Positions 7,196-58,404 of a stretch of DNA of 64,000 bases are shown here, in pieces (the first letter of the stretch is position 1; the number at the start of each line of letters is the position of its first letter). The position numbers and the translations under genes were made by a program. The notes beneath the pieces are model-generated. The model saw only the letters and a list, made by a program, of their open reading frames with translations. It was not told the DNA's origin and made no database searches. Source of the stretch: Macrostomum hystrix (taxonomy: Eukaryota > Animalia > Platyhelminthes); contig CATNEN010000014.1 of assembly GCA_950097015.1 (NCBI GenBank), positions 1 to 64,000 on the forward strand. Reading direction: 5' to 3'.

Positions 7196-7739
7196 CTTTA
7201 GATCCCTTTGTTTCACCTATAGACAATTTTCCCATATTACCACGATACTACTCTTCTATATGACTGCTCTCCCACCCTTGTAAAGTCCTTAATCTCTATG
7301 CTACGAGTTTTAACGTGTTTTACGGTGTTTTAAAGCTAACCCTAACCCCTAGCCTATGTCTAACTCTAGCCTTCTGCATTTTTATCCTCTATTTCTTCTC
7401 TTATTCTCCTATCTTTAATCTGCTTCATTGTTTTATTCTTTACCTACTTTTCTACCCCCCGATATGTAGTGAAATTTGTATTTTTTAATTTTTAATTCTT
7501 ACTTTCTACCCACAATGTATTACTCGTATTTCATTAGTAGTATTCATAGCGCTAATTGATATTTTACACTTTTAAAATTTAGTCAACACGTATTTTTTAG
7601 GTATTTTCTAGGTTATTATTATTGCACCCGAGTGAGCCCATTTTTCTTATATGTAAACCAATGCAACTCTTTTTTAACCCACTTTTTCACTGCCAATATC
7701 TACAATATTTACAATATTTACAATATTTACAATACATTC

Positions 7740-7779
7740 GCTCCTGAAGAAGGCTGAAGACAGCCGAAACGCGTCGAGC
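7740..7779 (+). ncRNA. Minimal type I hammerhead ribozyme (Penelope-like-element type)
   Basis: GCTC-CTGAAGA-A-GGCTG(AAGA)CAGCC-GAAA-C-GC-G-TC/GAGC. Core CUGANGA at 7744-7750, 5-bp stem II, GAAA at 7766-7769, palindromic stem III ACGCGT, GUC cleavage after 7775, 4-bp stem I GCTC/GAGC. Confidence 0.8.
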
Positions 7780-7860
7780 ATACCCTATTTATTTTGTTCC
7801 CCGTCTTGCTTAATTATTTCTCGTCTGTTGATTGGCTGCCGGCCTCGGAACCCTCCTAGT

Positions 7861-7897
7861 CCTAACCCTAACCCTAACCCTAACCCTAACCCTAACC

Positions 7898-7938
<41 letters not shown>

Positions 7939-7984
7939 CCCTAACCCTAACCCTAACCCTAACCCTAACCCTAACCCTAACCCT
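7861..7984. repeat. Short telomeric tract, about 20 CCCTAA units
   Basis: Perfect units with one extra A at 7920, ending in CCCT. Confidence 0.97.
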
Positions 7985-8065
7985 TTTTTCAAGAAATTAA
8001 GAAATGCAAGAAATTAGGGATTTTGAAGTAGGGATTTAGAATCAGGGAAGCCGTGTTCGGGAAGC

Positions 8066-8470: not shown

Positions 8471-9494
8471 GGTTTGCTGAAAAAAAAATTAATTATGAAT
8501 TTAGGCCTGTGCAAAGCACGTAATAAAGCATGCTATCTGTTTTCCTTAAACAAAGCAACCAGGGGTAATATATCATAATCTGCTCTATGACTCTACTAAT
8601 TAGTAGTATAAAATGGAAAATTTGATTTTCTGGCTTGGTAGTATTCAAATTAGAATACATCCTAATTTAGCCCTAAAACTTTTACTTTAAAAAATCTAAC
8701 GAATATGAAGAGTTGTTCCTTAACAAAGAGCTATTTGCTAAGCCCTTAAAGCATCTTTTACTTAAAAAAACGCAATGACATTATGAGATAAAAAACTGAA
8801 CAAATATTACAGCGCAGTGGCGCTTTATTGTTTAGTAGGCGCATCAATCAACGCATAAATGATATTTTAGCCTTGCATTGAAGTATTCACATGCAGCACA
8901 AACTATTTGGCAAAGAAGTTTGGAACTGTAGCACAAAGAAATGCTGTCGAACGCATAAATGCTTCATTTATTAAATTTGATAAGCAAAATGGACGCCTGA
9001 AAAAGAAGTTGAGAACTGCAAAACTCAGACGCCAAAAGTAAATACTCGTAAATCTACACTTAACTGATGCATTTAGAGTACCTGAACATGATGTAATAAA
9101 GATTTGCGCAAATGTTCACCCCTGCTGCTTGTAATACCAGTAGAAACGTGCCGTTCGGAAGTCAAATCCCTCGTTCGGTTTGAAGATCCCACAGAATCTT
9201 CGTTCGGATCGAGCACTAAAATATATTTTTTTTCGAGTTGTATTTGCTTGAAAATATGGGTTTTATGTTTTTCTGAAAGAAAAAATTGTTTTACACAACT
9301 TTTAAAAAGTTTGAATTTTACAGCTAGTAAGATAAAAAAGTTATTGCTAGTTAAGTTTTCAAAAGCACAACATTCTTGTTCGGTTGATGATGCTTTACCC
9401 TAGCTTGATTTAACATAATTATATATTTTACATTGCATTATATAATTTTTGCATTTTATATATTAGGCACTAGTGCAACTAGAAGAGGGGATAG

Positions 9495-10075: not shown

Positions 10076-10299
10076 TAAAGTTTAATTCAATTCCATCAAT
10101 GAAAATATACTCGTAAAATTTAATCGGTCGTATTTATTTAAAGACACTTCGGAAAAGGAAAAATATAAATGCAATGAAGTCTCGAAATGTGCAGCTTTGA
10201 CTTTGACTGCTTCATTTGACTGCTGATTAGAAATCATTCTCTAACTTCTAATTTCTAAAATCTTCCGCTGATACAGAGTACAAATATATTGCAAAAATC

Positions 10300-12628: not shown

Positions 12629-12671
12629 CAGGCACGCCTAAGTTAAAGTATCTTTCGCAAGCCTCGCTCCA

Positions 12672-12789: not shown

Positions 12790-14316
12790 CCCACTAAAAA
12801 CGGTTTCTCGGAATCCGGTCGGAGCATCTGATCGGAATTTATAGTGAAATTGTCTCGTTCAATCCGATCGGATTCTTGTCGGAATTTCCGATACTTAAAT
12901 GACGCCTAAATCCGATTGAATTGCGAATACCTAATTTTACTTCTATAGCACACGTATCAAGCTGGTGACAGGTAGGCTGCTACATCAGTCACTGAAGACA
13001 AGTTATACTCGTAGCATGAGTGAGGTATAATTAGCACTAGCCGTGATCACAAAGATACTTCGTTTTGAAGGCCGAAACAACCATTTAAATGTATAAGCAA
13101 TTTGTTAGATTGCTAGATTGCCGGATTAGACGAGATTGCAACTAGATTGCAGTTAACGTACGTAGTTTTCACTAGGCATTGTCTAAGTTCCAGAAATTTT
13201 TTAGCAATGCCTAGCAATGAATTTTTAGCAAATTCTCATCACTTTACAGAGAAAAGGGTATTCAAATAATTTTTAACTTTTGAATTTATAAGTTTAGAAA
13301 ACCAAAAGCTTAATAACTATCTATGTTGCCAAAATGTAACAGAAAGGTCACTGGCGAAATGACAAAATAGAGATTTTTGCGAAAAGGACTAAGAATCCTA
13401 ACTGACAGCAAATAAAAAACATGTAATCAACAATCATGCTTTTCTACCCTGCGAGGTCACGCTGATAAGTTCATGCTGATAAATTGATAAGTTCAAGGTC
13501 ATGCTGATAAGTTAAGCGTGAGGTACTTAAGTGTGGAAAGAGAATTTTAAAGGCCGTTAGCTTTCTAGCTAAGAAAAGAGGCATATGCCTCATGCCTCTA
13601 TAAGTATGCTCACCAAACTCAAGTGCTTATTTACTTTAAAAATCAAGCCGAGTGATAGGGGGAGAGGATGATAAACTGACCATACGCTCGTATTTATAAT
13701 GAATTTTGACAATCAATGTGTGACATTCTGATAAACTCAGAAGGGGTTTCAGTCTCGGCCGCAGCCAGAGCACTAACCGAAAACGTGCCGCGCAACTGCG
13801 CTCAAGTTGTCTATTTAAAGATGCAAAAGGGTGGTACAAATTATAAGTCGGGGCGGCGCGTGAAAACACCCGCAGCCTCTCACAACCCCCACCAAAAGAT
13901 CGAAACCTCCTCAACAAAATCCAACAGGCGCAATTGCAAGCAAATTCGAATTGAACAATTGAATTACATTAACCAACTCTTAAAATCACCGCGATGACCA
14001 AAACGCAAAACCTCTGTAAAAAGGCAGAGTTAGCTGCCAAGACAGGAACAGAAAACTATAATAGGAAACTATCACACTAAGTACACCGCGCTGTAGGTTG
14101 AGGTTGATTGTGTCTAACTGACTATGTTACATCAATGTACGCTCTTTTATCACCCCAAATCCTTGCACCAAACGTGCCATCGTCTATCGTTCAAGCTTAA
14201 AACATAAAAACCGCCGAACTCAGGAGCGTGGAGCTCTGAGAGTTGATTCGCTCTCGCACAATAAATCTGTGGTTTTCTTCATATCATAAACATGAAGCCA
14301 CGCGCTCTCCCTACCA

Positions 14317-18182: not shown

Positions 18183-19426
18183 GTAGCCGTCGAATCCCCT
18201 CTCCCTGGATCTGTTTCAGCCCCCTGTAGGAATGACTGATCGCGGGCCATAACTTTATTGTATGAGCTAGTTTAGGTCATAATTCCCCTCCAAACCGCGA
18301 TCAGATATTGGGAATCACTCGGGTATTATGAGTGATCATTAATTCTTCATGTCCCCACTTCTTTACAGTATTCGAGCCCAGCTCGACTTTATGACCTCCT
18401 CTCTTAGATACATGTAAATGTCACTGTAGGCAGGTCGGCGCCTGCGCTTCCCATTGTCCTGGCGGAGTAACAATTATTGGCCGACTGCCGGCGGCTGCTC
18501 GTAAAGGAGCATCTGTCGTTTCTCGCCGCCGGTTCATTGGGTAATCGGGGTGGCCATCGCCGCTTCGATTCCTCGATGACAGGCTGGCGCGAATGTGGGT
18601 TATTTTGATGAATGTCGAGGTTGGCGTGCGGCAGGACTATTTAAGCAAGCGCGCTGCGCTGCTCCTCCCGGACCTCCCTTCGGACCCTCTCCAACCTCCC
18701 GACCTCCCCGACCGCCCAGACCGCCTTTCCGACTCCGTTCGGACCCTCCGGACTCATCTCTACCACTTAGGGCTTAGACCCTCGAGCTCAAAGCTCAGCA
18801 TAGCGCTCACAGGCCCATTGCCTGCGCCTAATCCCCTAACAGTGCAAGCCACCTCTTTAGGTGAGCCCTCAAATTGAGCCTCAGAGCTCCATTGGTGTGT
18901 TGGCCCCTGCCAGCTCATTTCCGTTTAGGAAATAATGTAAGATTTCCGTTAAGGAAAGAATGTTTATTGTTATTTATGCTGTGATTGAATTATGAGACGT
19001 AAGTCTGAGAAAGATCTTTGCTTAGTATATTTAAGTGTAGCTAGAACGATGGAGGGTACAGTAAGGGGTGTCTATGGGAGGAGCGAATGCTGAGAGAAGT
19101 ACGAGCGTAAAATTAAAGTGATATTACACTGCGGTGTGGAATTCTATGGGAATCAGAATGCTAAGTGAGCTGGAGTGCAGCATTGCGGGAACAAACAAAT
19201 GTAGAATAAATCTGGGTGAGCAAATGAAAATTAAGACATAAATTATAAATATTATGGAGAGATGTTTATCTCGACAGGTTCGGGGGCGCGAAGGCTGAGA
19301 GTGTAAGCAACGAATGGTGGAGTGAACAAGGATACTGTGTTCTGCAGTGCATGCGATGAACAAGAGCTTGTAGTAGTTATTGTAATAATTTAACAGTTTA
19401 GCGAATTGTGGCATTTAGCTGTTGAG

Positions 19427-27795: not shown

Positions 27796-29483
27796 TGGTA
27801 GGGAGAGCGCGTGGCTTCATGTTTATGATATGAAGAAAACCACAGATTTATTGTGCGAGAGCGAATCAACTCTCAGAGCTCCACGCTCCTGAGTTCGGCG
27901 GTTTTTATGTTTTAAGCTTGAACGATAGACGATGGCACGTTTGGTGCAAGGATTTGGGGTGATAAAAGAGCGTACATTGATGTAACATAGTCAGTTAGAC
28001 ACAATCAACCTCAACCTACAGCGCGGTGTACTTAGTGTGATAGTTTCCTATTATAGTTTTCTGTTCCTGTCTTGGCAGCTAACTCTGCCTTTTTACAGAG
28101 GTTTTGCGTTTTGGTCATCGCGGTGATTTTAAGAGTTGGTTAATGTAATTCAATTGTTCAATTCGAATTTGCTTGCAATTGCGCCTGTTGGATTTTGTTG
28201 AGGAGGTTTCGATCTTTTGGTGGGGGTTGTGAGAGGCTGCGGGTGTTTTCACGCGCCGCCCCGACTTATAATTTGTACCACCCTTTTGCATCTTTAAATA
28301 GACAACTTGAGCGCAGTTGCGCGGCACGTTTTCGGTTAGTGCTCTGGCTGCGGCCGAGACTGAAACCCCTTCTGAGTTTATCAGAATGTCACACATTGAT
28401 TGTCAAAATTCATTATAAATACGAGCGTATGGTCAGTTTATCATCCTCTCCCCCTATCACTCGGCTTGATTTTTAAAGTAAATAAGCACTTGAGTTTGGT
28501 GAGCATACTTATAGAGGCATGAGGCATATGCCTCTTTTCTTAGCTAGAAAGCTAACGGCCTTTAAAATTCTCTTTCCACACTTAAGTACCTCACGCTTAA
28601 CTTATCAGCATGACCTTGAACTTATCAATTTATCAGCATGAACTTATCAGCGTGACCTCGCAGGGTAGAAAAGCATGATTGTTGATTACATGTTTTTTAT
28701 TTGCTGTCAGTTAGGATTCTTAGTCCTTTTCGCAAAAATCTCTATTTTGTCATTTCGCCAGTGACCTTTCTGTTACATTTTGGCAACATAGATAGTTATT
28801 AAGCTTTTGGTTTTCTAAACTTATAAATTCAAAAGTTAAAAATTATTTGAATACCCTTTTCTCTGTAAAGTGATGAGAATTTGCTAAAAATTCATTGCTA
28901 GGCATTGCTAAAAAATTTCTGGAACTTAGACAATGCCTAGTGAAAACTACGTACGTTAACTGCAATCTAGTTGCAATCTCGTCTAATCCGGCAATCTAGC
29001 AATCTAACAAATTGCTTATACATTTAAATGGTTGTTTCGGCCTTCAAAACGAAGTATCTTTGTGATCACGGCTAGTGCTAATTATACCTCACTCATGCTA
29101 CGAGTATAACTTGTCTTCAGTGACTGATGTAGCAGCCTACCTGTCACCAGCTTGATACGTGTGCTATAGAAGTAAAATTAGGTATTCGCAATTCAATCGG
29201 ATTTAGGCGTCATTTAAGTATCGGAAATTCCGACAAGAATCCGATCGGATTGAACGAGACAATTTCACTATAAATTCCGATCAGATGCTCCGACCGGATT
29301 CCGAGAAACCGTTTTTAGTGGGCTGTGAGCTGTCCGTCAGGAGAGGTCGAGTCACCTGTGAGCTGTCCGGCAGGAGAGGTGGAGTCACCTGTGCGCTGCC
29401 CGGCAGGAGAGGTCGAGTCACTTGTGCGTTGCCCGGCAGGTGGAGCGAGGCTTGCGAAAGATACTTTAACTTAGGCGTGCCTG

Positions 29484-34074: not shown

Positions 34075-34984
34075 TCAGTCGACGATCATGCGACCTTTGC
34101 CGAAGTTCATTCCGGCCTGGCTGGCACCCTTGTTATAGCCTGCCTGTAGCCCAATAACAGCCTTGCTGGCGTTCAGCTGCTCGTCGCTGAACTCCCGCTT
34201 GTTTTCCTCGGATAGCTTTGGTCCAAGTACCGGGCCAGTAAACTCCGCGTGCACCTGGCACTGAGGGGAGTGCGTCGGACCATGCAGGGTTAGGGTGTTT
34301 CTTGTATATAGTGTTACTTTTCATTAGAGCCCAGAATACAACAAAATTCCATTTACTCACCGTGCGACCCAGTGCAAACAAGCATTGTGTGACCTGGCTA
34401 ATATCCTTCTTTTCGTACAAGTCAACAGTCTGGAAGACATCAGTTGTCGGCACACCGTAGGCCTTGATTGCGTTTTGGAAGGCACTAATGTTCTCCATGA
34501 TCTTAAAGGGCATACTGTTAGCGTCGTTGATCTTCTTCACACTGCCTGGCTTGATTTTATTGATCAACTTGCACAGAACGATTCCTGCAAGAATGTCCTT
34601 AGTGCATGTAGTTAGTTTCTTTTCAGTAAAGTTACTATTATGAAACAAGTTTCGGTAATGATATGTTAGTGAAGTTGATAGTGGGTTAGTGGCTTTGTAA
34701 AACTATGCAAAAAATGGCTTATTTTCTTTCTGGTTCTCACCATTCTGGAGAATATTCTCATAACCCTTTTCGCGATCCAGCTTCTCGCCCGTGATAGACT
34801 CGATCCAATCGAGCACCTCAGCCTCCTGCCCTGCATCGCGCTTGCCGTCGAGCTACAAAGGTAAATAAAACGTAATCGCAATTTACGCTAAGCGATTTCC
34901 CATTGCAAAGTGTAAGGTGAACTCCAAAGTTACCTTTTTCTTAATCTGAGCGCTCAGACCATAAGCCACACCCTGGTTTGCCAT
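34075..34984 (-). CDS. Myophilin / transgelin / MP20-like calponin-family protein, 190 aa, 4 exons
   Basis: Exons 34984-34934, 34852-34741, 34584-34361 and 34260-34075, all GT-AG, total 573 nt. One CH domain and one calponin repeat (VIGLQAGYNKGASQAGM). Confidence 0.95.
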
Positions 34985-36689
34985 CGCTAACTTCGCCGAA
35001 TGTGATGCACGGGGTGCCTAAAAGCAAGATACGATAGCAGCAGAGTGGCAGCAGGATTTTAGAAGGGTTGGTCGATGGGTTTTTATGCCTGCTTTGCCTT
35101 CAAGCCTTCCCATTCCTGACCTATTCCAGCAATCGTATATTCTTTCCGTGTGCTTCTGCAGCGGGAAAGATCGATAATGAATTTCCTTTCCCGTTGAAGA
35201 CCGTACGCCCATTCGTGGATCGAGCGAGCATCCAAGCATCTGTGCTAGCAATATTTTGTGAAAGTATGCATCAAGCGAAGATTGGGTGAATTGCAGGCGC
35301 AGTTTTCTATAGGCTTGAAAATCACATTTGAACTGTCCCTGCTGCATGCTTTCCTTGCCCAAAATTCCTCGTATTCCTATTTTGGCATTCGCTCATTAGA
35401 AGCGCCCATTTCGCTTTCCTTTGACCTGAATCCTAAAGTTTTCAACCCAAATCTAGTCATAAACCGTAGCATGAACGCAAGTGTAAGTAATGTTCGAAGA
35501 CTTAGCTAGATGGATTGCGCACAAGAAACCTGGCTTCGGAAGCAAATTACTGGGGCTAGTTGCTTTATCTTTCCAAGCGGATTAGCATGCATGTTGCTGG
35601 TTTGGTTTAGTCAAATCACTTTTGTACGTATACTTTATTTTGCTTTTCGCTTGGCACTCGTTATTTACACGGGGCCGTGTAAATATTTTTTCGAATTATT
35701 TGTACTTAACTTAGTGCATTTTACCCAAGCATGTTAATTAGTATGATCTAAATAGCTAAATTTTTATTTCTATTTTTTGTCACTCAATAGATTAAACACA
35801 TTGAGATTATACTCGTAGATTAATAGGCTAAACACATTAAGTAAAGACTTAAGACCCTACACTTAACTTATTAATCAGATTACCTGCTTAAACTAGTATT
35901 AATCTCAGCTAAAATAAGTACGAGTACACATTTCCACGGAAAAATGCGAAACTTATTTACAAGGTCAGTGTAAAGAAACAAGTGCCTTTTCTTGTCAATA
36001 GGTCTCATTGCCAAAGTATCAGGAAAAAGTGATCGAGATTATCGAGATTTATAATAGTGGACTGGCCGCCATGCTTGTCGCTTTATATAAGCATGTGCTT
36101 TGTATATTTTATGTGCTGCACATTTCCGAAATTTTTCATCTCTCTAGCCATGTACAATGTTCAAAAAATTCCATAGCAGTTGAGTTGATTGATATAAATT
36201 TGCTATCGGTGGGCCGCGATTCCTGCGAATCATTATATTGAGAAAATCTTGCAAAACCGTGTCGACGCTTTGCTAAAAGTACAATCTAGCGGCACTCAGT
36301 GGCGCATGACTAAAGCGTATCATCCGCTTGTAAAATTCGTACTTGTAAATTGCTGTGTCGCTTTTGAATATAAGTGCGCACTGGCATGACTGAACAATCA
36401 TGGATTTGCGTACTCTGGTGACTATCAATGGCAATAAGTTTCAGCTGTATAACTTTTGCATGGTCGAACATTTTTCAGTCGCAATGTATACAAGCTGACC
36501 TTGTACGCTGCCCTTAATAAAAAAGTGCATCATTTTTTGCAATTAAAAACTTGAACTGAAAAAATTCTAACCGAAGCAAGATAACAAATGTATAATATTT
36601 GTTTTAAGAAGCGTCCGCGTATTGTTTTTTGCCGAGTAAAAAATTTACTTTTTTGAGCATGTGAGACGGTTTAAATAACTGCTCTGTTT

Positions 36690-36950: not shown

Positions 36951-37844
36951 TACCTGGACAGAATTTTCTGTTACACCGAAACGCCTTACTCTTCCAACAT
37001 GTTGGTCGACATTCGTTCGCTGGCAGTAAAGCGTGCTATCTGACGCTGCACTCATTTTCGCTTGGATATGCGTTATTTGATTTTGTCGCTGGTCTTTTCA
37101 TAGATAGAAATACACGTACCTAGCCCAGTTGGGCCCACCGATTCTATATGCACATGATGTGCTGTAGTCTGCTGAGCAGCCTCCAGGCAATCTAGCTGTG
37201 GAGTCAGCGCTGCCCTGGTGCTGTGGGAGGGCTTGGGAGTAGGAAGTCTGCGGTTTCCCGTACACACTCACATCCGCTCGCTACCCCCTCCTCTTTCTCT
37301 CTCTCGTTCCAGCTGTCTGCGCACTGACTCATATTGCACGCCATGGTGAAATCGCTTCGGTTCGGAAGAAGACTGGCAGAACATGGCTCAAATGCTCCTA
37401 CTATAAGTAGAGCACAGTCCAACGTTCTTACGTTTACTTCACCGTTTGCCTTTGAGTTAGAAGCATATTTTGCTTGCGCTAAGCGTTGTCTCTAACTCTC
37501 ACTTTGTGTCTAGTCCTTGTGACGAAGATACACTATTTGCGGGGCTAAGTCTTGGATTCCTCAAGACTTAGTGAATTCCCAGTCCGTGAAGTTCCCCACC
37601 CTAACGAAAAACTTAGGCAACCCCAAGCCTGACTACCCAGTTGCTCCACTGCAAGGAAGCATCAGGTTGAGGCAGGTAAAACCCTCTCTGAGTACTAGCG
37701 TTCCCAGTCTTGGTTATTTTACCAATTGTGTGTGTCACGTAGCTACCACAGGTACAATACACATAAGGATCGATGTGTATATAGCTCGTAGGATATGTGG
37801 TTGGGCCAGATGGCCAGTAGCACAGAATCGGCAGCTACACGGCG

Positions 37845-41465: not shown

Positions 41466-43489
41466 GGCTGCACTTTTCCAAAACCAGCATGTACAGCCAG
41501 GCTCTTCATGGCAATCTCAAATGAAATCTTAGGGGCCTGATATCTTCTGTACCTTGTACTGTGATAAGCCTGATTGTTGCAGCTTCATTTAGGATGCTAT
41601 ATAGAAAAAAAACTGATTGTACTACGATTGTATAATAACAGGAAGGGTACATTTTCTGCGAATCCAAGGCACTGAAGTTTAAATCAACTGCTACATCATG
41701 GCAGCAACCACGGAAGTAAATGTAATACACAATACAATATGCGGATAGCACAATAACGTTTCGTTGCTAAAAAAATAATGACAAAAAAGAATGAAACCGT
41801 TTTACGCTCTTGCAAAGCTTTACATATGGGTCAAAAGGTTAACATCATGCCTATGGCGAAAAAACGCTAAATCTAAATGTCTTTAATCCTAACAATAAAA
41901 ATCTCAGCAGTAATAGAAAAAGTCAAATGAAAAAATAATGTTGGTTGCATATGTGAATCAATTGTGCCATTGACGGAAGCATTCGGTGACAGACAATCCA
42001 GGCTAACCATGACACTGTTCGCAGATAAAGACACTGCCTCGTATTCTGCTAATACAGTAGCAGACTCGGCTGCGGCGTGCAGGCTACTGACTTTAATCTC
42101 AGCCTGTAAATCAGCAACATTGGAAGCTGATGAGGCAGACAAACTTGCTGGGCAGGGCCGGCAGTGAAATTGGCAGTACGAATAAGTCTCTTACCGGGTC
42201 CTGAGGTCTGATGCAGGGCGATGAACAGTCTGCTCCATGAACTGCAGAAACGGATGCTCGCCACCAGATCTACTGCAGACAATCCACGCATTGTGCGCCT
42301 GCTGCTTATGATTCTTAATCGGATTAGTAGTTTGTTCGCGTCTCTGTTTCTATACGCAGTTTAATTTCATAAAATCACTGTTTGAGTATTCTGCGTAAGT
42401 TCTGTGGGCGCAAATAGAGTTTGAAATTTTACGGTTCATTTTGCTGTTAATCAGCTGCAAAAACAAGCAAGCACTAAAAACAATACTACATATGTGAAAG
42501 CTGTTTACTTGTGAAAATAAAGATAAAAAATCTGCGAAAAATACGTAGCACGAAATAAAAATTATGTGTTTTTTCATATTATCCAACTGCGTTTCTGCCA
42601 TATTTCTCATCCAACACTCCACATAAGGCTTCGCGAAAAATCCAGTGCACGAAATCCAGGCATTTTGCGCTCCTGCATTATTGACAAAAATAATTACAAA
42701 TACTACTAACCACCACAGAACGTTCTACTCTCGATTTGTGCAAATTTAGTGTATTTTGTTGGACTACAGCAATGTGCACTTTTATTTGAGACGATGAAGC
42801 AGATTGAGAATCGTCTATGTCTACAACCTCTGCTGCTTGTATAGGATCAAGCCCAAAATACACTAGCTTTAGTAGCTTAGAGCTGCTCAACAGGAGCACT
42901 AGAGTTAGACCGTAAAAGGCCAAGCTAGAGGCTAGCCACTAAATTTGGTCGTCTCCGTCATCTGACTCAGAAGTAACATATTTAAGCATAAAAAAGGAAA
43001 AAAGAAAACATATTTGTACTCGTAAGAGAAATAAAGTAAACGAGCTGGTCATATTTTTCAGTAGTGGCTCTATTACAGGTCACCATGGTGTACTCTATTA
43101 GAGGCTAGTATTTATTTCACGACACCAAATCGGAGTATGCGACAGATTTTAAGATTAGTTAAACGTAGATAAATGTAGCTACAATCAGAAACATGTTAAA
43201 CTTCACACTCGTGTGATACTAGAACTCAACGCTGCCACTCAGTCAGCCACTGAGACAGATACTTTTATTCTCACACTGTGCTTGCGCAACAATCACTGCT
43301 GCTTGTCCCTCCAGCCCTCGATTCAAACCTACAAGCGGGCAAAAAAATGCGCAATGCGCGGTTTAACATTTTTCTGAGTGTATGTGAATAAAAGCGGGAG
43401 AGTAGCATGGTGTCAACACATAGCTTCAGTTTTCACTGCTGGATTTTGGAAGAAAGCTGGAAAGCTTCTAGTGATGAAATCCGCCTGCA

Positions 43490-46400
43490 TTAGGCAGCTT
43501 CCCCGCTGCTATTGGAGGACAGTGACCCTGCTAGGCTTCCATGCAGAGACCTCTGGCCTGGCTTCTGTGAAGTGAAGCCACCAAATTTCATTGACTTTGT
43601 CGCTTCGTCGGTCTGAGGCATGTAAAAGAGACAATAAAAATGCGTTTTAAAATCAGATAAATGTAAATCAACCCAACTTAAAAACCCCAGTCCAATGAAA
43701 ACCCAGTTCCTTTCTAGCTTGCATAAGTTTTCCTAATTTTTAGCAATTTTTGTAAATCTTTTAAATCTGCAGTAGGTCTAAGACAGTATTTTTTCTCAGC
43801 TCTCAGCTTCAGAGGGAAATAGCGACCACAAAGCTGTAAGCTAGTTGTAAACAGGTGAAACTAACCTGCAAACGAGAGATCACTGCAACATAGCAGCGAG
43901 CCTCCAGAACATCTTTCGAAACACCCTGAAATTGGAAGTCGATGTGCAGCTTCTTCACAATAAAGCTGAGGCAGGCGACTTGGTATGGGTGTAGTGAAAC
44001 AGAAATCCGCTTTGTCACCAGCCAGTCGTGTAGCTGGTAGAGCTGGTGGTTGTACCAGATCTGAGGGAAAGCCGATAGCGACGTGAAAGTACAGTAGAAT
44101 ACAAACTTGTTGTGTGCCATTCTTACTTTAGATTTTTAGCTAAAATTTTACGTAAAATTGCAGCGATTGTTCATACGAGTACAAATAACTAAATATATAC
44201 ATGGGCTGCGTGGCCATATACATGGCCATATGAACAATATATTGCTAATCTGTTTCACTAGCATGTGAAAACATTTCAGAATGTATTGAAATGTATTGAA
44301 CATCCCGCGCTACAAAAGCTTGGCGTGTGGACGCTAACTTCTAACCTGTGTAAATTATTCTCAAGCATTTCACTTACGTCAAATATGCTGAGTGCGATAA
44401 GCTTATCGTTGATGCAAAGCCGCAGCTGCTTAACGTTCTTTTGGAAGAATTCCACGTACGCCTCGCTCAGTTTGTCAGTGGGTCTCGTGATGGACAGCAA
44501 AGAAGAAAAGACAGCGCTTTCATCATAACGGGCTAGTCGGACAAGCACAGCCTTAAGTACTTCGTCAAAGTGTTCTACCATGTTGTTTATTAGTTGCGAC
44601 TGCAGTTTTTCAAGTAACTCGCCCGTTCTCGCATGGTACTCGGGCTTTAATGAAGGAGACGAAATCAGTTAAGTTAACGTATTTATCTGGGACTCAATTT
44701 TAATCTCAAATTAAAAATGCAATCTATGTTTCATTTAATAAAATTTTGTGAAATCTGCCACTCTGCTTAGGCGTTTGAGAATCAACATGCTGACCTGCTT
44801 TGTTTTTTGCTAAGCAAGGTCTATTAAAATGATACACACAGTATCGTTTAGTATATGAAAGCCATTTTAAACATGGATGAACATAAGGGGGTTGAGTGGC
44901 AGCGGTAACGCACCTCTCCGAGCCAGAATTAGCGGCGGGGCACGTCTGGGCGCTGCCGCGGAAAAGCTGAGCAATTTACGACCATGAGGGCCAACTCCTT
45001 AAGGCAAAGTGAGTGTACACTGTCTGACGATGAAAAATTCATGGCAGATGTACACACCCCTGTATGAGTGTAGCTGCGTAATGAATTTATGTTTTTATGT
45101 GCCCTAGGGTAAGTGGATTGCCTCCTCTCTGGCTGTGGGTCGACTGCTGCCATATAATACCAGTCCCTACAGTCCCATGCAAAAATTGAACCGAAAAGAT
45201 AACATTAAATGAAAACAGCTGAGTGATTGGTATATATAACTCGCCAAAAAGTACGTCACAATGTCAATAAGCGAATATCTGTGTACGCAAAAAATAAACT
45301 TACCATATTCACACCGGACGAAATCGAGCAGAGATCAAATACTCTGGATTTCATTGCGACGCAGGTGTTAAACATGACGCAGAGCTCCACAGGCAGTACA
45401 AAGTCCGTCCCCTTGCTGGCCCGCTTTAAAGCAGCATCAAATGCAAAGGCGGTCCGCCTGGCTGCAGCATCCAACATGTCAGAGGCCATGAGCTTGAGCC
45501 GGCTGTACAAGTGCTCCGCAAACACAGGCTCTGGCCAATGTAGGTCTGCGATGAATGACTGCAGCGCTTCTAGCTTCCACAACAGGTCCTCACTCGTTGC
45601 GCAGCCACCACCCTTTGGCACCCAGGTCTCTTGCTCAAATCCCTTGTGAATGGATTGGGCAATCGACGATTCCATAAGGTCAATGTAACGAACAACCTGT
45701 GGAGCGAACGTCTCATGCAGCTGCTGATGGAACTTTCCATTGCGTAGGTTTGCTGCGTAAATATAGTGGTATTGATCCAATAAAAAATTAACTTCATTTT
45801 ATCTAGCTCGATAGTCGAAACAGCAGCTAGTCATGCGTTTCAGTCATACCTTCTATTGCATGAATTTACGTGATACGTAATGTACTCGTAAAACGGAAAT
45901 ATTAAAGCAAAAGCTAAATTGCAAGCTTACACAGACTTATCACTTACACTCAGATGACTAAACTTCGAAGCAGAAATTGCCCAAACAGATGTAATGAACA
46001 GCAAATTATGGTAAGGCAATGTGGAGCATAACGGGCAAAAAATCCAAATGGCTCACCGTTACATCTGAGGTAGTCATTAAGTAGCTTAAAAACAAGAAAC
46101 GAGTCCCAGACATCAGGCGGCAGGCTCTCAAGAACTGCGAACATGTCTACGGCAAACATAGACAAAAATATCTCAGCGTGGTCGACCAGTAGATCAGAAA
46201 ACCATGTAAAGGACTGTAAAATTCAGTTAGTTTGATAAATATTTTGGTTGGTTGTTTTTACGCTGAGTTTTAGACCATGTACAGATGTAAATAAAGTTTA
46301 TTAATAAAACAAGTTACACATTCGAAATTGATTGCATCGACGTTGGGTTTGATTCATTTAAGCAAGACAGCGAGAGAATTTTTTTTAGTCAGAAAGTTTT

Positions 46401-52400: not shown

Positions 52401-55400
52401 CCATCAGCACGGTCAACACTGGGACATTGGAGGGTGCCATTGAGCCGGCGCCGAGGCCTGCGGGCTGGCCGCAAACCCTGTTAAGGTCAAAGGGTGACAC
52501 CTGTCCCTCAGGGCCGTAGCCAGAGGTACCTGATCACGCACAGGTGCACGAAAATTGCGGACAAGCCACATACCCTGTTAAGGTCAAAGGGTGACACCTT
52601 TCCCTCCAGCCGGGGCTAGAGGTACCCAGTTTGGCCGGAGGCCCTGGATGGGTCATCCAGCGCTGTTGCCCATTCTGTCCGGCTGCCCTAGGGTCAGCCT
52701 TGAACACTCGCGGGACGTGTACCCATGGGTCAGCTGACGGGACAGCGTTGGAGGGATTCCTGCACCCGAAGGTACAGGTCTCCTTCCTGCCAGGCCTGCT
52801 CAAAAAACGGCTGCAGGTGTGAGGCATCGCAGACCAAAGCCCGTGGGCCTGGACTGACTCATACCTCACAGGCACTGTGTCCCGCCGGTGCGAGCTCTGC
52901 GGCGCTAACTGGGGTCACGATATCTTTCATAAGAACCTGTGACGGTCGAGACAGTGAAAATAATTGTAAGTACGGCAATTATTTTCAAGCAGTTATGGTG
53001 ATGTGCATGCTAGCTAACTATGCATGCTAACTTACTAGTATAGATTTCTCGCTTTGCCACACGACATAATCAAGGATTAATTAAACAAATAAAGTCATAC
53101 CCGCTCCAGTAGTGAAAGAGTCCCTTTTAGCGCACCCTCGGGACGGCCGAACGGAAAACAAAAGCGAAACTCGGTAACCTGATGCACCAGAAACAGCCTA
53201 AGCCTCTGCTTGATCTCCTCAAAGCGAGTTCGCTCTTCGTGCAGCACAGTTCCTATACCATCAGGCCTGGGAGTTTTTTATTGGTAAAAAACTGTAAACT
53301 GCTGCAGCTTTCTTAATATAAGTGCAAACTAAGTATTAAGTATTAAACAATCTGCATTGCACTTCGTGCAATAAATGGTTAAGCAGTTAAAAAGTATGAT
53401 TTAAAATGATTTAAGTTATATTGGACAGTAAAATGATTTTAAAGATTTTTTAAAAAATCATTTAAATTATAAAGGAACCAGGTTAAAATTATTAAGGCGT
53501 GAAATAGTCACGCTTTTAGGTCAATGGGCAACCGCGAGAGGCGTAATGTTCGCTATACTCTCGTCACCAAGTCTTAATATTCGAGCGATATATGAACTAA
53601 GATTTAACTAACTGTAACAGTTAGTTACAGTGCGATCGCATAGTTACTAATGAAAGACGAGTATCAGTATTGAACATTTATTTTTACTATATCTGATATC
53701 GATATGGTCATCGCGGAATAACATTTGGTTACCAGAACTTGCCTTTTACCGTGTACATGAGAAACACAAAAGGCAAAGCTGTAGTGCATCAGCGCTGGGT
53801 CAATAGCTAAGCAGCGGATCTCCTGGGCATCGAGAAGGTTCTCCAAGTAGTAGATGTGCCTGAGACAACCGCGCACTCCGTACCTCGCGCAGTACTCGTC
53901 TAGAACAAATAGCTGATCAGGACTAAGCCAACCAAGGCTACAGTATGGATCAGCAAACCGGTATTCGAGAGTGAGTGATTGCAGCCTGCGAAACAAGGCC
54001 GCGTGGTTATGTCGACGAGAATCTGTACGCACGATCTCTTCAATATCAGCACGCCGAGTAGCCACGACAGCAGATGACAGCGACGATGAGGCATGGGGTG
54101 CAGCGGCAGTTCCCGATGGCAGAGCATCCTGAGGCACTTCAGGTTTGTGGGTCTGATCTGTAGCCCTATAGATGGCCTGAACCCACAGCTTCCGATCTGC
54201 TTCATCATCCGAGGCGTATGTGACAGAGTCACCCTCACGAACAGTGCCGAAGAAAAAGTGGCGCGCGGAAGCCGCACTCGTCAGCAACAGTTCAGATGTT
54301 TTTTCACAAAGATAGTCCACCGTGCAGTCACTCAATGACATAACTTCATGTGGCTCGGGATTTCTGTCTTGAAATGAGGCAATCACGAAGTTGCACTGGC
54401 TAATCTGGTGAAGCCAGTGGATGGAGGGAGGGTCAGTCCGGAAATGTGCATAGCGTCAAATTAGATATTGAACGCTGAAATTATAGGCACACCTGTACTA
54501 GACAGACATAGCGCTTTTTCCACTTCTTGAAGAAATTCTTTCCGGTCATCCACAACCAGCCGCAGTGTTTCAGGTTGTACGGTTTATCCATGCGCAGAAA
54601 AATTTTTATTCTTAGGTCGTCTGAACAGTTCTTGCCTGTGACCATCTTGTACCACTCATAGCCGTTGGCTGTCGTACACGTCGGCTTAAGAATCACCTAG
54701 GGAGAAAATAATAATTATTGCTTCCATGGCGCAAGCTATTTAGGTAGTGATATTTTCAGTTTTAAATACCGAAAAATTGTCATGAGCACATTAGCATATC
54801 TGGATTCCATTCTGACAAAAATTTTATAATGAACAAGGAAGTTTAATCGATCGACAGCAACTAAGCGTATCATTCTTGAGAATGATACCATTGACCAAAG
54901 CAATGAGATTTGGTCATTGAAGTATGACCAAAGTCAAACTGGACGGTCTACCTCCACAAATTACCGTCAATGGCGAGTTGCTGTATTAATCCGGATCGTC
55001 GAAGAGTCGACTGGTGTGGTGAGAGCGGCGAAGTGCGGTGGTTGGGACCGCTTCATTCCTAGATCTATGGATCGCTGATGATCCGATTTTGTAAGTCATA
55101 GCTCGCAAAGCAGAACAGAACTTAGATTAGGAACCCATCGAGGAGAACTGTATTTGATGACATTGTTCTTTATTATGTTCCGATTCCAGTTTTTAATGAG
55201 TTTATGCTTCGCTTTATTTACGAATCATACGCTCGTATAAGCTACATTATGCCACAACTTTCTACCTTAACTTTGAACACCTTAATGCTTGCAATCAATT
55301 GATCCGTGCTACGTTTCTTTTTATCAATCGCCTTTCAAATACATACGCTAAATAGGTGCTCCCAGAACTAAACCGATTGAAACAAAACAGCAGTTTTGGC

Positions 55401-57070
55401 CAAAGAATATCTTAAGCGACAGCGAAATGCATTGGATTTCACTATAGTGGAATAAACAGATTGTTCTTAGGACCAAGTCGACGGGGAACGCTATATTTTA
55501 ATCATTATACGCTATATTCGCTATAATCATAAACGCTATATTTGTATGTTTCTACAATGCATTGAACCATATTTTCTAGAAAAAATTTATAAAATATAGT
55601 ATTAGCATACTGGGAAGTAGCAAAAGCGATCGAAGTATTTGCACAGGCAATTAACTATAGATAGCAATTTTAGCCCTCAGAAAAGCTAGTTTGAAAAATT
55701 ATCCGGCATTTCCGCTGTAGACTGAAATAAGACCATTGTAGACTGAAATACCGGTCAGATTTAGATGTTTAGTATAAGTGTGATTTTTAAGTGTACTTTA
55801 GCAGAGAATGAAGGCATCACATGAGTTGGTCCGTAAGTGCGTTTCAGGCGTTGAGTGAGCGACAATATGAAAAAAATATGATAAGGTAAAAATAATCACC
55901 TTGCCTAGTTGCTTGTCTTCGAGGCTGAGCATCCCAGCAGTCTCTGCAAAGAGCTTTACTCTGATAGTAGGTAGGGGCTGGGAGGTGCTGAAATCCCCTT
56001 GTGTATCCCACAACGGATGCGATGCCTTAGCTTTATCAGTCCGCAGCTTTTCTCCACCATCGAGCTCCATCGTGCAGTACACAACGCGGCTTCCCGACAC
56101 GCATTTTAGGTTGCGAACCTCGCAAACCATGACCTGAAAATAATCACGTGTCAAATCTTAACATTTAACTAAGTACATGGGACTTAGCAATGAGAAATGC
56201 ATACATTTAATTTTTTATCTTTACTCAAAGCCTCTGAGAAACCTAAAAGCAACATATTTATCTAACTGAAATTCACCGATAAATATTCATTATCGGCAGC
56301 ATTTTATAGGAATAAATCTAAAAAACCCCGAGACCCTTGTGTGCTAGGATTGACATTTCCAACTTTACTAACTTTACCAACTTTACTAAATTGGTGCTCC
56401 GGAGTCGGTGGCAGAGCGGTTAACGCGTTTGCCTCTTGCACCACGGTTCCTAAGTTCGATTCCACGGCGAGGCCACATGTATTTGGAGCGCAGCCTCAAA
56501 TATTATTAATTTATTAAATTATTAAATTGGTGCTCCACCTGTACATTTTATGGAAATATACATACAGATTCTCCAATTGGACCATAGATTGACCAAATTT
56601 GTCCCTCACTGCATCGTATAATTCCTAGGTGAAATATAAGCAGCCAGCCAACGACAGCGTACGTCGTACGCTACGACAGCCAATGGCTATGAGTGGTACA
56701 ATAAACAGATCATTACGCAGGCTATAATAAAAAATGCTATAATAGCTACGTATATATAATATACTAATGAAGAGGAAAACATTACCTGTATGCTGAAGTT
56801 AAGTTGTATGCTACCGAAATGTGAGGTGCTATAATTTCGTACAGATTCACCAGATACAACTTTGCTGTGCTGCTTGACATTGTGTCGAATTTTTAGCGGT
56901 GTCTGGTGGTGATGCGTAAGCCCAAGCAAATTACGACCACCGGTGTCTGAGCTACCTTTTTGCATTGGCACTGCCTCCAGGTTGTTCATGAGTTGGGACA
57001 CTGTCGCCCTGGCCTCTTCGTTGAACAGCGGCTCCATGCCCTTCACAGTAAATTTCGGGTACTTACGGTA
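43490..57070 (-). CDS. CADPS: Calcium-dependent secretion activator (CAPS/unc-31). The 5' exons lie outside the recognised region and one exon is split by a LINE.
   Basis: Exons 57070-56786, 56133-55900 (C2), 54696-54493 (PH), 54404-53743, 53266-53101, 52936-52895 + 46829-46748, 46663-46557, 46213-46057, 45752-45304 (MHD1), 44644-44378, 44060-43866 and 43612-43490. Motifs include [28 protein letters not shown] and [16 protein letters not shown]. Confidence 0.93.
44888..45160 (+). mobile_element. Diverged SINE family A copy in a CADPS intron
   Basis: CACTGTCTGACGATG...GCAGATGTACACAC matches 1760-1810. Confidence 0.7.
46962..50666 (-). CDS. LINE ORF2: AP endonuclease - RT - RNase H - CCHC, 1234 aa
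   Basis: VQEPW/GDVNSHH/SDH endonuclease motifs, [35 protein letters not shown] RNase H, and CPFC...[10 protein letters not shown]. Confidence 0.96.
50679..52238 (-). CDS. LINE ORF1, 519 aa (DUF4780-like core, low-complexity flanks)
   Basis: Long ORF immediately upstream of ORF2 on the same strand. It has no CCHC knuckles. The domain call is by eye. Confidence 0.8.
   Translation of the reverse strand: MQLSMASSPSTAPAEDTMVPEAIHAAAPGLAGPATATNAALPNSRDDRGAKRSTTSGAAKRRRRMLAHGTSAPLTKDQAQARGAEGALPRAGAGAGGLVPPAQAPARGGAHDAPRPGSRAKEGPAPIRTAARPEGEAEAEGPVPTADADPEGGDATGQGPGPQATYAAIARRQPAVIITGRDGKRLSSEQLSDICRNIDAMLWQLQLKGEPLAVGASATRESCFVVWPGDAESGRRLLELLPTQSWAAGLEFLRENEPPKTKRHRIFVPAKSVVTSAEDLRRGLIAMNRELPTAGLIVHRTILRPDGTGFTAILGLSEQWTRRYPDGANICIGLWKTKIFAFEADKTRGQTGPTTVPANEGSSDPKAGTGGRAQSSRQKRPERAIAGSSERRPARVTKRRGLLQRASEVVRTAKMAQLRAEMRGGPPGQAPQPRATGEASEVPSSIEQGPSSAPPTAQGAVSAPVEGDSGPGLGAGGGDWAADAVEFPSPARGLGTEEPMATDIDPEEEDRLLAGSPSK
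56401..56495 (+). mobile_element. SINE family A head only (tRNA-like part)
   Basis: GGAGTCGGTGGCAGAGCGG...AAGTTCGATTCC. Confidence 0.8.
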
Positions 57071-57344
57071 CTGAGGGACCAACGGAATGAAGTGAGAATT
57101 TTAATTAATCAATTGTGAGAAAAAACTAATAAATTGATTAATCAAAATCTCCAAGAAAAGAATAATCAAACAAGCCGATGAGCTGACAGTAGCACCTTTT
57201 TAGTGCACGCGATTATGGGTGACCATGAAATCTAAATCTAAAGGCAACAGTCACTGATTCACTCATTCTCCTTCTCATTCGCATTTTCAACCTGTCGATT
57301 CTAATACTCGTAAAATGCAAAATAATTTACAAATTATTTTAATA

Positions 57345-57652
57345 ATTGATTACACCTGCCCCAATTGGGTCAGATGTGCAGCCGACAGCACAGCCGCAGC
57401 TAATGCGCGGCGCATCTGAAGGCTGCGTACAGCTGTTCAGTACATGGACTGGGGGACGCCACACCCACCTTCAATTATCCTGATTGAATGATGCTGGTGC
57501 TGATGCTGGTACCCATTTAACAGCTGGGTGAACTGAAGCAATGTAGAGTTAAGTGTCTTGCTAAAGGACACAAATTGTTCAGGGGAGTCGGGAATCGAAC
57601 CCCCGACCTTCAAGTCGTGAGTCCGACGCCCTAACCACTAGGCTACAACCTC
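57345..57652 (-). mobile_element. tRNA-derived CORE-type SINE (family B)
   Basis: Head GTAGCCTAGTGGTTAGGGCG...GGTTCGATTCCCG followed by a CORE-like TGTGTCCTTTAGCAAGACACTTAAC...CCCAGCTGTTAAATGGGTACC. Confidence 0.8.
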
Positions 57653-58404
57653 TACAAATTATACTATACTCTTTTAAAGATATTTTTACTAGAGCTACAA
57701 AAGATCGGCAACATCTGGTTCTTAATTGTGTGTCTTACCTCTCCTCTGGCATAACTCTCCCTGCAATCCGGCATATCTATCCAATCAGTTTTATCTATCT
57801 GCTTTCCATCTATCGTCCTTTATTTGGCTAACTATAGTTTCCAGCTATAGCTATATATCCCTGAAACTCACGTGCATGAACTCCTAACTGAACTGTGTAT
57901 ATATAAATGCACTTACCAATATAGACTCCTCTAGCAGTTGTAGACGTCCATCTAGCTCACGGCGGATTTGAGCCGCCTGCTCGTCTGCGTTGTCCAACTA
58001 AAAAATAGGGTGAAAACAGTTTTTTAGCTTTAACCAAGCTTAGATATCTTAATTATTTGTACTCGTATATGCTAATAGAATAAATATCTCAGAACAATTC
58101 CAAGGGACAAAAATTGGACAACAAAAACTTGGTTTCGAAAGTATCGGCAGCACTTTTATAAATCATCAATAAATAATCCAAAATGAGCTATGTAGTGAAA
58201 CATGTGACGTGTACTTTAGTTTTTTTCTAGGCTGTTGTGTCAGGCCGGTTTGTTTGGCTCGCCCTCTCTTACCCCCCGTCTCTGCTCTGTTGCCCTGAGC
58301 CGTCACCTGATTGGCTGGGCGCAGGCATGGTCTCTTACCCCTCCCAGCCCTGCTTGGCTTTGCCCCTCCTGCAAATCAGCTCTGCTTAGCTATGCCCGTC
58401 CACT

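What the first reader, a model, noticed from the sequence alone, without database searches (positions are those of the whole stretch)
7521..58067. Fourteen TACTCGTA/TACGAGTA octamers: the Minos-type excision footprint scattered across the window
Seen: exact copies at 7521, 9043, 10108, 13006 (mirror 29099), 33681, 33833, 35810, 35919, 43017, 44174, 45883, 57305 and 58060. A rough independent-base estimate gives about 2 expected. All lie in introns or intergenic DNA, none in exons or the young LINE, BEL, MULE or RTE copies. Known: the Tc1/mariner element Minos leaves TA-CTCG-TA or TA-CGAG-TA after excision (four terminal bases plus the duplicated TA). Inference: a Minos-like family has cut and pasted so often that scars occur about every 4-5 kb, giving a readable fossil record of transposition. 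A dispersed protein-binding or methylation motif is the alternative.
Basis: partly seen in the sequence, partly recalled or inferred. Interest (0 to 1): 0.85.

Follow-up and report, generated by a model that had tools for sequence, protein, structure and literature searches.

The report
Transposon excision scars littering flatworm DNA
An eight-letter string that recurs about every 4 kb in this Macrostomum flatworm DNA is the small scar left each time a cut-and-paste transposon jumped out of a TA site, so the genome keeps a readable tally of past jumps; the transposon itself was not found.

Summary
There are 14 exact TACTCGTA/TACGAGTA copies at the stated coordinates, against about 1.4 expected. 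Thirteen are independent, because 13006 and 29099 are mirror copies in an inverted duplication.

The window comes from a Macrostomum species other than M. lignano. Its own genome was out of reach, so I tested the idea on about 125 kb of M. lignano, where the octamer is also enriched (11 vs 1.1 expected).
- Two paralogue pairs show exact empty/filled sites: TA vs TA-CTCG-TA, and TA vs TA-CGAGC-TA.
- Two tandem arrays give polarity. One unit carries +6 bp at a TA that the aligned sister units lack.
- Length variants TA-G-CTCG-TA and TA-CG-CTCG-TA are also enriched, but point variants are not.
- A second scar string, TACATGTA, is abundant in M. lignano (19 vs 1.8 expected) and occurs once in the window.

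A binding motif explains none of these results.

Corrections and gaps:
- Sites 33681 and 33833 lie in the 3'UTR exon of an expressed transgelin-like gene, so "none in exons" is wrong.
- No element with TA|CGAG...CTCG|TA ends and no Tc1/mariner transposase turned up in the roughly 180 kb examined.

First-stage readers flagged the same octamer in at least five other windows of this genome; those notes are unchecked.

The parts
7521..7528 (+). TA-CTCG-TA scar, between degenerate telomeric tracts
   Evidence: tandem repeat map
9043..9050 (+). TA-CTCG-TA scar, unannotated DNA
10108..10115 (+). TA-CTCG-TA scar, next to a 41/62-bp tandem repeat
13006..13013 (+). TA-CTCG-TA scar in the left arm of the 4.9-kb inverted duplication
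29099..29106 (-). Mirror copy of the 13006 scar in the right arm of the inverted duplication; not an independent event
33681..33688 (+). Scar inside the 3'UTR exon of the minus-strand transgelin-like mRNA (reads TACGAGTA in the mRNA)
33833..33840 (+). Second scar inside the same 3'UTR exon
35810..35817 (+). Scar about 760 bp upstream of the transgelin-like gene's mRNA 5' end (about 35052)
35919..35926 (-). TA-CGAG-TA scar about 870 bp upstream of the same gene
43017..43024 (+). Scar past the 3'-most MUN exon identified in the CAPS gene; intron or intergenic, not resolved
44174..44181 (-). TA-CGAG-TA scar about 100 bp past the MUN exon 44279-44668, outside that exon's open frame; probably CAPS intron
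45883..45890 (+). Scar in a CAPS intron, 85 bp outside the MUN-exon reading frame 45259-45798
57305..57312 (+). Scar 5' of the C2_CAPS exon; intron or upstream region
58060..58067 (+). Scar 5' of the C2_CAPS exon; intron or upstream region
13683..13692 (+). 10-mer variant TA-CG-CTCG-TA in the left arm of the inverted duplication; its mirror copy is at 28420-28429
55228..55237 (+). 10-mer variant TA-CG-CTCG-TA, independent site
19100..19109 (-). 10-mer variant (TACGAGCGTA) in the BEL LTR; a duplicate sits in the other LTR at 25127-25136
37782..37790 (+). 9-mer variant TA-G-CTCG-TA

Best explanation
The octamers are excision scars of a TA-targeting cut-and-paste DNA transposon whose ends read CGAG(C)...(G)CTCG.

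Proposed mechanism: the element inserts at a TA and duplicates it. When it leaves, staggered cuts leave the last four bases of each end as overhangs on the flanking DNA. The two overhangs pair at their outer bases only. Repair fixes either CTCG or CGAG between the two TAs, a net +6 bp. Less tidy end-joining gives TA-GCTCG-TA (+7 bp) and TA-CG-CTCG-TA (+8 bp).

Shown here: the strings are strongly enriched in two Macrostomum species; they are derived insertions at a single TA; they come as a length series on one core; and they can hit the TA of an earlier scar.

Inferred: that the agent is a Tc1/mariner-type (Minos-like) element, and the cleavage geometry. The element itself was not found.
For: Enrichment: 14 (13 independent) vs 1.4 expected in the window; 11 vs 1.10 in 123.5 kb of non-redundant M. 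lignano (P = 3e-8).

Empty/filled sites: alignment A1 has TA-CTCG-TA in L004-L006 against a single TA in L007, in a 3'UTR alignment with 96% mean column identity. It is one of 18 indels in 2.58 kb. L002:17457 has TA-CGAGC-TA against a single TA in L003, within a 99.65%-identical block.

Polarity: in the L010 26-bp tandem array, one unit carries CGAGTA at the TA and ten sister units lack it. In the L009 27-bp array, one unit has +6 bp (CTCGTA) and another has +6 bp (TACATG) at the same TA.

Variant series enriched in both species: TAGCTCGTA 6 vs 0.24 and TACGCTCGTA 4 vs 0.03 in M. lignano; TACGCTCGTA at 3 independent sites vs 0.05 in the window. No point variant exceeds 4 copies, and the commonest one is the CpG-decay form.

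Compound scars: TA-GCTCG-TA-CTCG-TA at L002:19500, and two scars 10 bp apart at L002:18947-18973.

No fixed orientation to genes: the window's transgelin 3'UTR reads TACGAGTA in the mRNA, while its M. lignano orthologue's 3'UTR reads TACTCGTA.

Species-specific scar spectra: TACATGTA 19 vs 1.76 in M. lignano, but once in the window.

Not an assembly artefact: RNA contigs from three other samples contain the two 3'UTR sites.

[quoted passage not shown] The exact Minos strings TACTCGTA/TACGAGTA are from my memory of Arca et al. 1997, Genetics 145:267, and were not checked here.
Against: - No element with TA|CGAG...CTCG|TA termini and matching inverted repeats was found in the window or in L002-L011.
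- No Tc1/mariner transposase domain appeared in 69 ORFs screened.
- The one M. lignano Tc1/mariner family whose ends I could look up (DD37E 'Mosquito') has CTGGG ends.
- No filled allele, meaning an element still sitting at a site, was seen.
- In the window's own species, no empty allele was seen over the four sites covered by the one read-laying run. All empty/filled evidence is from M. lignano.
- The two paralogue indels have no outgroup; polarity rests on the two tandem arrays.
- The restored target context (TA followed outward by Y-A-W) is only weakly different from the AT-rich background.
Confidence: 0.78

Rival explanations
1. The same TA -> TA-CTCG-TA insertions are made by something other than an ordinary resident Tc1/mariner transposon. 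Candidates are a different TA-duplicating superfamily, a domesticated transposase acting on now-lost substrates, or an extinct or horizontally transient element that left only scars.
For: No parent element or transposase was seen in about 180 kb (Pfam). The insertion nature is shown, but the agent is only inferred.
Against: One event lies in a 99.65%-identical duplicate block, so activity is very recent and an extinct source is unlikely. TA duplication plus retained terminal bases is the specific signature of Tc1/mariner excision (PMC2874221). The DNA sampled is under 0.05% of a 500-760 Mb genome, so not finding the parent carries little weight.
Confidence: 0.12
2. TACTCGTA is a functional cis-element, such as a protein-binding site, a 3'UTR or RNA motif, or a methylation target, kept exact by selection.
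For: The octamer is sharply defined and enriched in two species. Several copies lie in or just past 3'UTRs or near genes. The window shows a 10:3 strand bias.
Against: - It is present or absent as exact 6-7-bp indels at a TA between near-identical paralogues, and within tandem arrays.
- Length variants are enriched, but substitution variants are not.
- Orientation relative to the mRNA differs between orthologous 3'UTRs.
- Sites occur in introns, UTRs, intergenic DNA and satellite units alike.
- The strand bias is not significant.
- A second, unrelated TA-flanked string behaves the same way in M. lignano.
Confidence: 0.04
3. The octamers are the conserved core of an old, degenerate dispersed repeat (MITE or SINE) whose flanks have diverged beyond recognition.
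For: Three window sites share a short upstream TTATTTG-like context (43017, 44174, 58060).
Against: BLAST of +/-250 bp around every site finds no similarity among sites except the inverted duplication. An old repeat would show many point-mutated cores, which are not enriched. Empty sites show that only 6-7 bp are inserted.
Confidence: 0.03
4. Chance or compositional bias, or an assembly or sequencing artefact.
For: None beyond the small size of the sample.
Against: 0 of 100 shuffles reach 14. Poisson P is about 3e-9 in the window and 3e-8 in M. lignano. The enrichment appears in a second species assembled independently, and in RNA contigs from other samples.
Confidence: 0.01

Closest known systems
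Minos (Tc1 family, Drosophila hydei) excision footprint
   Same: A 6-bp net insertion at a TA, made of the four terminal transposon bases between two TAs. The two alternative strings are the same as here (TACTCGTA / TACGAGTA, from my memory of Arca et al. 1997). The 6-bp size is confirmed in PMC10992017. The fifth base inferred here (CGAGC) also matches the Minos terminus as I recall it.
   Different: Minos footprints are known from induced excisions at individual loci in flies and heterologous hosts. Here the scars are a genome-wide, naturally accumulated load (about 1 per 3-11 kb) in flatworms, and no Minos-like element or transposase has been identified. Sharing four or five terminal bases does not show family membership.
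Tc1/Tc3 and Sleeping Beauty footprints (C. elegans, vertebrate cells)
   Same: The general mechanism is the same: TA target duplication, staggered cleavage that leaves terminal bases on the donor flanks, and end-joining repair that leaves a short footprint flanked by TA (PMC2874221). TACATGTA, abundant in M. lignano, has the form expected for CA...TG-ended elements. That reading is my inference.
   Different: Terminal bases and overhang lengths differ. PMC2874221 gives the SB scar as TAG(T/A)CTA. These footprints have been studied locus by locus, not as the top over-represented word of a genome.
DD37E 'Mosquito' Tc1/mariner elements of Macrostomum lignano (PMC10379824)
   Same: This shows that M. 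lignano carries intact TA-duplicating Tc1/mariner elements (35 copies, 6 intact, 24-bp TIRs).
   Different: Their termini are CTGGG/CTGGG, not CGAG, so they cannot be the source of these scars.

Membership tests
Tc1/mariner excision footprint (Minos type) | The insertion sits at a TA, and the scar is flanked by TA on both sides | tested here: met
   All sites read TA-CTCG-TA or TA-CGAG-TA. The empty counterparts carry a single TA.
Tc1/mariner excision footprint (Minos type) | A related copy or allele with identical flanks lacks exactly the inserted bases (empty site) | tested here: met
   A1: L004-L006 vs L007, 6 bp. L002 vs L003, 7 bp. All evidence is in M. lignano. In the window's own species, one call covering four sites showed no alternative allele.
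Tc1/mariner excision footprint (Minos type) | The scar is the derived state (insertion), not the ancestral one | tested here: met
   In tandem arrays in L010 (26-bp unit) and L009 (27-bp unit), one unit is +6 bp and the aligned sister units are not.
Tc1/mariner excision footprint (Minos type) | Both alternative cores (either end's bases) occur, as expected from repair of a mismatched overhang pair | tested here: met
   Window 11:3. In M. lignano both orientations are present. Departure from 1:1 is not significant.
Tc1/mariner excision footprint (Minos type) | A spectrum of non-canonical scars sharing the terminal bases (end-joining heterogeneity) | tested here: met
   TAGCTCGTA and TACGCTCGTA are enriched 25- to over 100-fold. 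One TAGCTCGTA-type site is itself an empty/filled pair.
Tc1/mariner excision footprint (Minos type) | A parent element with TA-flanked CGAG...CTCG inverted termini exists in the same genome | tested here: inconclusive
   None was found in the window or in L002-L011. This is under 0.05% of the genome, and the M. lignano annotation excludes repeat-derived genes (PMC5730564), so transposases could not be reached.
Tc1/mariner excision footprint (Minos type) | A DDE (DD34E-type) transposase able to act on those ends | not testable with these tools
   69 ORFs screened against Pfam gave no Tc1/mariner domain. No whole-genome protein search of these species was available.
Tc1/mariner excision footprint (Minos type) | Staggered cleavage four bases inside the element's 5' ends | not testable with these tools
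   Biochemical feature. It is inferred only from the 4-base core and the 5-base variant.
Regulatory or binding motif | Positional or orientation constraint relative to genes, tolerance of point variants, and conservation between paralogues | tested here: not met
   Orientation differs between orthologous 3'UTRs. Point variants are not enriched. The string is present or absent between near-identical paralogues.

The most novel reading that the evidence does not exclude
Macrostomum flatworms host a still-active Minos-like Tc1 element, or a small non-autonomous derivative. It has low copy number but a very high excision rate, so its scars (about 1 per 3-11 kb, implying on the order of 10^5 per genome) far outnumber its copies. 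These scars are among the commonest small insertions in the genus, even inside 3'UTRs and satellite units. Because the inferred termini match those of Minos, the endogenous transposase might also act on Minos-based transgenes in M. lignano.
Probability: 0.3. Interest if true: 0.75.

Novelty: new member of a known kind. Interest (0 to 1): 0.6.

Why it matters
Cut-and-paste transposons usually erase their own history, because copies move and only the survivors are counted. Here the scars form a dense, datable record of excision events in two species of a regeneration and evolution model genus. That record allows several things:
- estimating excision rates;
- comparing the activity of different transposon families between species (CTCG-type dominates in the window's species, CATG-type in M. 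lignano);
- measuring how much small-indel variation in UTRs, introns and satellites is transposon-made.

It also predicts an unidentified, recently active element with defined ends (TA|CGAGC...). If that element is found, it could serve as a native transgenesis vector for M. lignano, where heterologous Minos did not give transposase-mediated integration (PMC5730564). It could also be a source of instability for Minos-based constructs.

Tried and rejected
1. **Big inverted repeat as the parent element.** The half-sites TA|CGAGGGGC at 11986 and 30126 looked like termini 18 kb apart. The repeat continues identically past them (10522-15458 / 26654-31591), so they are internal.
2. **The 1.06-kb insertion in L003 next to an octamer.** It is an unrelated MITE with 79-bp GGGGATG... 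TIRs.
3. **The 38358-41457 element with TTTCCCGC subterminal repeats.** It has no CGAG ends.
4. **Read laying for empty alleles in the window's species.** Three of the four runs chosen were RNA, and the DNA run gave one identical contig.
5. **Orthologous comparison between the window and M. lignano.** Coding identity is only 77-83%, and non-coding DNA does not align.
6. **Reaching other genome loci through the LINE ORF2.** There was no exact record, and the M. lignano relatives have no contigs on record.
7. **Literature.** No paper in the library links Macrostomum to Minos-like elements or gives the exact Minos footprint string. PMC58754 and PMC164655 are not held.
8. **Rfam.** No family reached its gathering score in the window.
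9. **The spliced 190-aa transgelin protein.** I did not type it in. I reached it by reference through a stop-free stretch with a region restriction instead.
10. **TAGGCCTA.** This second scar, reported by other first readers, is not enriched here: 0 in the window, and 3 vs 2.1 expected in M. lignano.
Full report
**1. Observation**

The DNA search finds exactly the 14 sites listed: 11 TACTCGTA on the + strand and 3 on the - strand. Dinucleotide-preserving shuffles give 1.38 expected, and none of 100 shuffles reaches 14. Markov backgrounds of order 0 to 5 give 0.65-3.2 expected, and the octamer is the most over-represented non-satellite 8-mer in the window.

Sixty-base flanks are unrelated except for 13006(+) and 29099(-), which are identical. 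Those two lie in a 4.9-kb inverted duplication (10522-15458 and 26654-31591, 99.7% identical). That leaves 13 independent events (Poisson P about 3e-9).

The signal is sharp. No 1-mismatch variant exceeds 4 copies, and the commonest, TACTCATA, is the CpG-decay form. TA...TA is by far the commonest frame around the CTCG core.

**2. Where the sites lie**

Contigs of public runs laid on 32000-37900 showed that three of the four chosen runs are RNA. They define a minus-strand mRNA with:
- exons 33590-34260, 34361-34583, 34740-34852 and 34934 to about 35052;
- GT..AG introns;
- a poly(A) tail at 33590.

It encodes a 190-aa calponin-homology protein of the transgelin/myophilin type, with CDS 34984..34075 and a 485-nt 3'UTR. 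Octamers 33681 and 33833 are inside that 3'UTR and are present in RNA contigs from three samples.

The right half of the window is a minus-strand CAPS gene: a C2_CAPS exon near 55.9-56.1 kb, MUN exons at 45259-45798 and 44279-44668, and a LINE in an intron. 45883 is intronic and 44174 lies just outside a MUN exon's open frame. 43017, 57305 and 58060 are intronic or flanking.

None of the 13 sites falls in the ORF-bearing TE bodies, which hold 32% of the window's TA dinucleotides (P = 0.007). That figure depends on where TE boundaries are drawn.

**3. Organism and access to related DNA**

Protein matches and earlier scan notes point to Macrostomum. The window is not M. lignano itself: its transgelin gene is only 77-83% identical in coding sequence to the M. 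lignano orthologues, and non-coding DNA does not align.

The annotated M. lignano assembly (GCA_002269645.1) could be reached through exact protein look-ups. I fetched:
- L002, L003 and L008: a transgelin paralogue in two duplicated blocks;
- L004-L007: four copies of the orthologue;
- L009-L011: three CAPS copies, 30-57 kb each.

Wudarski et al. report 180 Mb of blocks at 95% identity or more in this assembly (PMC5730564). That is why paralogue pairs are plentiful.

**4. The enrichment generalises**

In 123.5 kb of non-redundant M. lignano DNA the octamer occurs 11 times against 1.10 expected (P = 3e-8).

**5. Empty versus filled sites**

(a) 106 bp past the stop codon of the M. lignano transgelin orthologue, three copies read CTAAGA-TA-CTCG-TA-TATAG. 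The fourth reads CTAAGA-TA-TATAG, in an alignment with 96% mean column identity (alignment A1). Across the 2.58-kb paralogous alignment there are 85 substitutions and 18 indels, and this is one of the 18.

(b) L002:17457 reads GTG-TA-CGAGC-TA-CGACC, where L003 reads GTG-TA-CGACC. The surrounding block is 99.65% identical, so the event is very recent or allelic.

An unbiased scan of all 3-14-bp indels between the first six loci recovers both events. It also finds a TA-CCA-TA event of classic mariner form.

**6. Polarity**

Tandem arrays supply internal outgroups.
- In L010, a 26-bp array has ten units reading CACCTGT-TA-GACAGG..., and its first unit reads CACCTGT-TA-CGAGTA-CACAGG... (32 bp).
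- In L009, and at the same place in L010 and L011, a 27-bp array has units reading ...ATTT-TA-GCGTCAGG. One unit reads ...ATTG-TA-CTCG-TA-GCGTCAGG (33 bp). Another carries TACATG at the same TA (33 bp).

The octamer is therefore a derived +6 bp insertion at a TA.

**7. A series of scars, not one motif**

Counting every string of the form TA + left-end prefix + right-end suffix + TA shows three enriched members in both species:

| String | Reading | M. lignano (obs / exp) | Window |
|---|---|---|---|
| TACTCGTA | TA-CTCG-TA | 11 / 1.10 | 13 independent sites |
| TAGCTCGTA | TA-G-CTCG-TA | 6 / 0.24 | 1 site |
| TACGCTCGTA | TA-CG-CTCG-TA | 4 / 0.03 | 3 independent sites vs 0.05 expected |

The extra base implies termini CGAGC...GCTCG.

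Compound scars also occur: TA-GCTCG-TA-CTCG-TA at L002:19500, two scars 10 bp apart at L002:18947-18973, and six scar-type strings within 2.6 kb of L007. These fit re-insertion into a scar's own TA and local hopping.

TACATGTA has the form expected for CA...TG-ended elements. It occurs 19 times vs 1.76 expected in M. lignano (P = 7e-14), including TACATGTACATGTA doublets, but only once in the window. The two species thus carry different scar spectra. Different transposon histories predict this; a conserved motif or a general mutational bias does not.

**8. Mechanism**

Established knowledge: Tc1/mariner elements duplicate a TA on insertion. [quoted passage not shown] Minos leaves 6 bp (PMC10992017). 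From memory (Arca et al. 1997, not verifiable in the library), the Minos footprints are exactly TACTCGTA and TACGAGTA. They are explained by four-base overhangs that pair at their outer bases and are mismatch-repaired either way.

The data here fit that scheme point by point. The cleavage geometry and the superfamily remain inferences.

**9. What is missing**

I did not find the element.
- TIR searches with exact and tolerant criteria, at up to 30 kb spacing, found nothing in the window or in L002-L011.
- 69 ORFs gave no Tc1/mariner domain.
- The M. lignano 'Mosquito' family has CTGGG ends.
- Three candidates turned out to be something else: the inverted duplication, an L003 MITE, and the 38.4-41.5 kb element.

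The DNA sampled is under 0.05% of the genome. The M. lignano annotation also excludes repeat-derived genes, so this absence carries little weight. It is nonetheless the main open point.

No empty or filled allele was seen in the window's own species. The single read-laying run covered four sites and found one identical DNA contig.

**10. Rivals**

A binding or RNA motif is contradicted by four results:
- the indel behaviour between paralogues;
- the enrichment of length variants without point variants;
- opposite mRNA orientation in orthologous 3'UTRs;
- occurrence inside satellite units.

An old dispersed repeat is contradicted by the lack of flank similarity and by the 6-7-bp size of the insertions. 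Chance and artefact are excluded. The live alternative is that the agent is not an ordinary resident Tc1/mariner element.

**11. Verdict**

The phenomenon is of a known kind, Minos-type excision footprints. What is unusual is its density, its presence in two species, and its visibility as the top over-represented word in the sequence.

First-stage readers flagged the same octamer in at least five other windows of this genome (s1-258404, s1-361134, s1-310534, s1-278301, s1-351291). Those notes are unchecked, and I did not use them as evidence.

Noticed in passing
window 1872-6874 (also 6996-7186, 7861-7984): A 5-kb, 99%-pure (CCCTAA)n telomere-type array lies inside the window with 1.8 kb of other DNA to its left. 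It is followed by degenerate telomeric tracts. It could be an interstitial telomere, a fusion point or an assembly join.
   Followed up: no
window 10522-15458 and 26654-31591: A 4.9-kb inverted duplication (99.7% identical) encloses 11 kb that includes a BEL/Pao element with 360-bp LTRs (18918-19277, 24945-25303). It could be a real palindrome or a long-read assembly artefact.
   Followed up: partly
window 33590-35052 (minus strand): A highly expressed four-exon transgelin/myophilin-like gene (190 aa; introns 34261-34360, 34584-34739, 34853-34933; poly(A) site at 33590). A template-switch adaptor marks its mRNA 5' end near 35052.
   Followed up: yes
window 15.5-63 kb: Every large TE ORF (BEL, LINE ORF2, three RT fragments) and both host genes lie on the minus strand. 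This one-sided TE orientation is reminiscent of a unistrand piRNA cluster or of orientation selection inside a long gene.
   Followed up: no
L007, L009-L011, L002 (M. lignano): TACATGTA (the form TA-CA|TG-TA) is 11-fold enriched in M. lignano (19 vs 1.76), with tandem doublets TACATGTACATGTA. In a 27-bp satellite it appears as a +6 bp insertion at the same TA that elsewhere carries the CTCG scar. It occurs once in the window.
   Followed up: partly
L002:5305 vs L003: A 5-bp indel, TA vs TA-CCA-TA, which has the form of a classic mariner (CCA-ended) footprint.
   Followed up: no
L003:2762-3820: A 1.06-kb MITE-like insertion with 79-bp TIRs (GGGGATGTTAAC...) is present in L003 and absent from the duplicate block L002. 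This is a recent insertion polymorphism.
   Followed up: partly
window 37713-37900: An extremely high-copy repeat begins here (summed contig word depth about 266,000 in the DNA run, with hundreds of loose ends at 37847-37897).
   Followed up: no
window 38358-41457: A roughly 3.1-kb element is bounded by inverted arrays of 15-bp TTTCCCGC-type subterminal repeats. No Pfam domain was found in its ORFs. It is probably a non-autonomous DNA transposon.
   Followed up: partly
window 58415-58771 and 59182-59385: Two arrays of a 15-bp unit (CATTTGACTGCGGAG and its complement) sit in inverted orientation just 3' of the RT fragment at 59919-61682.
   Followed up: no
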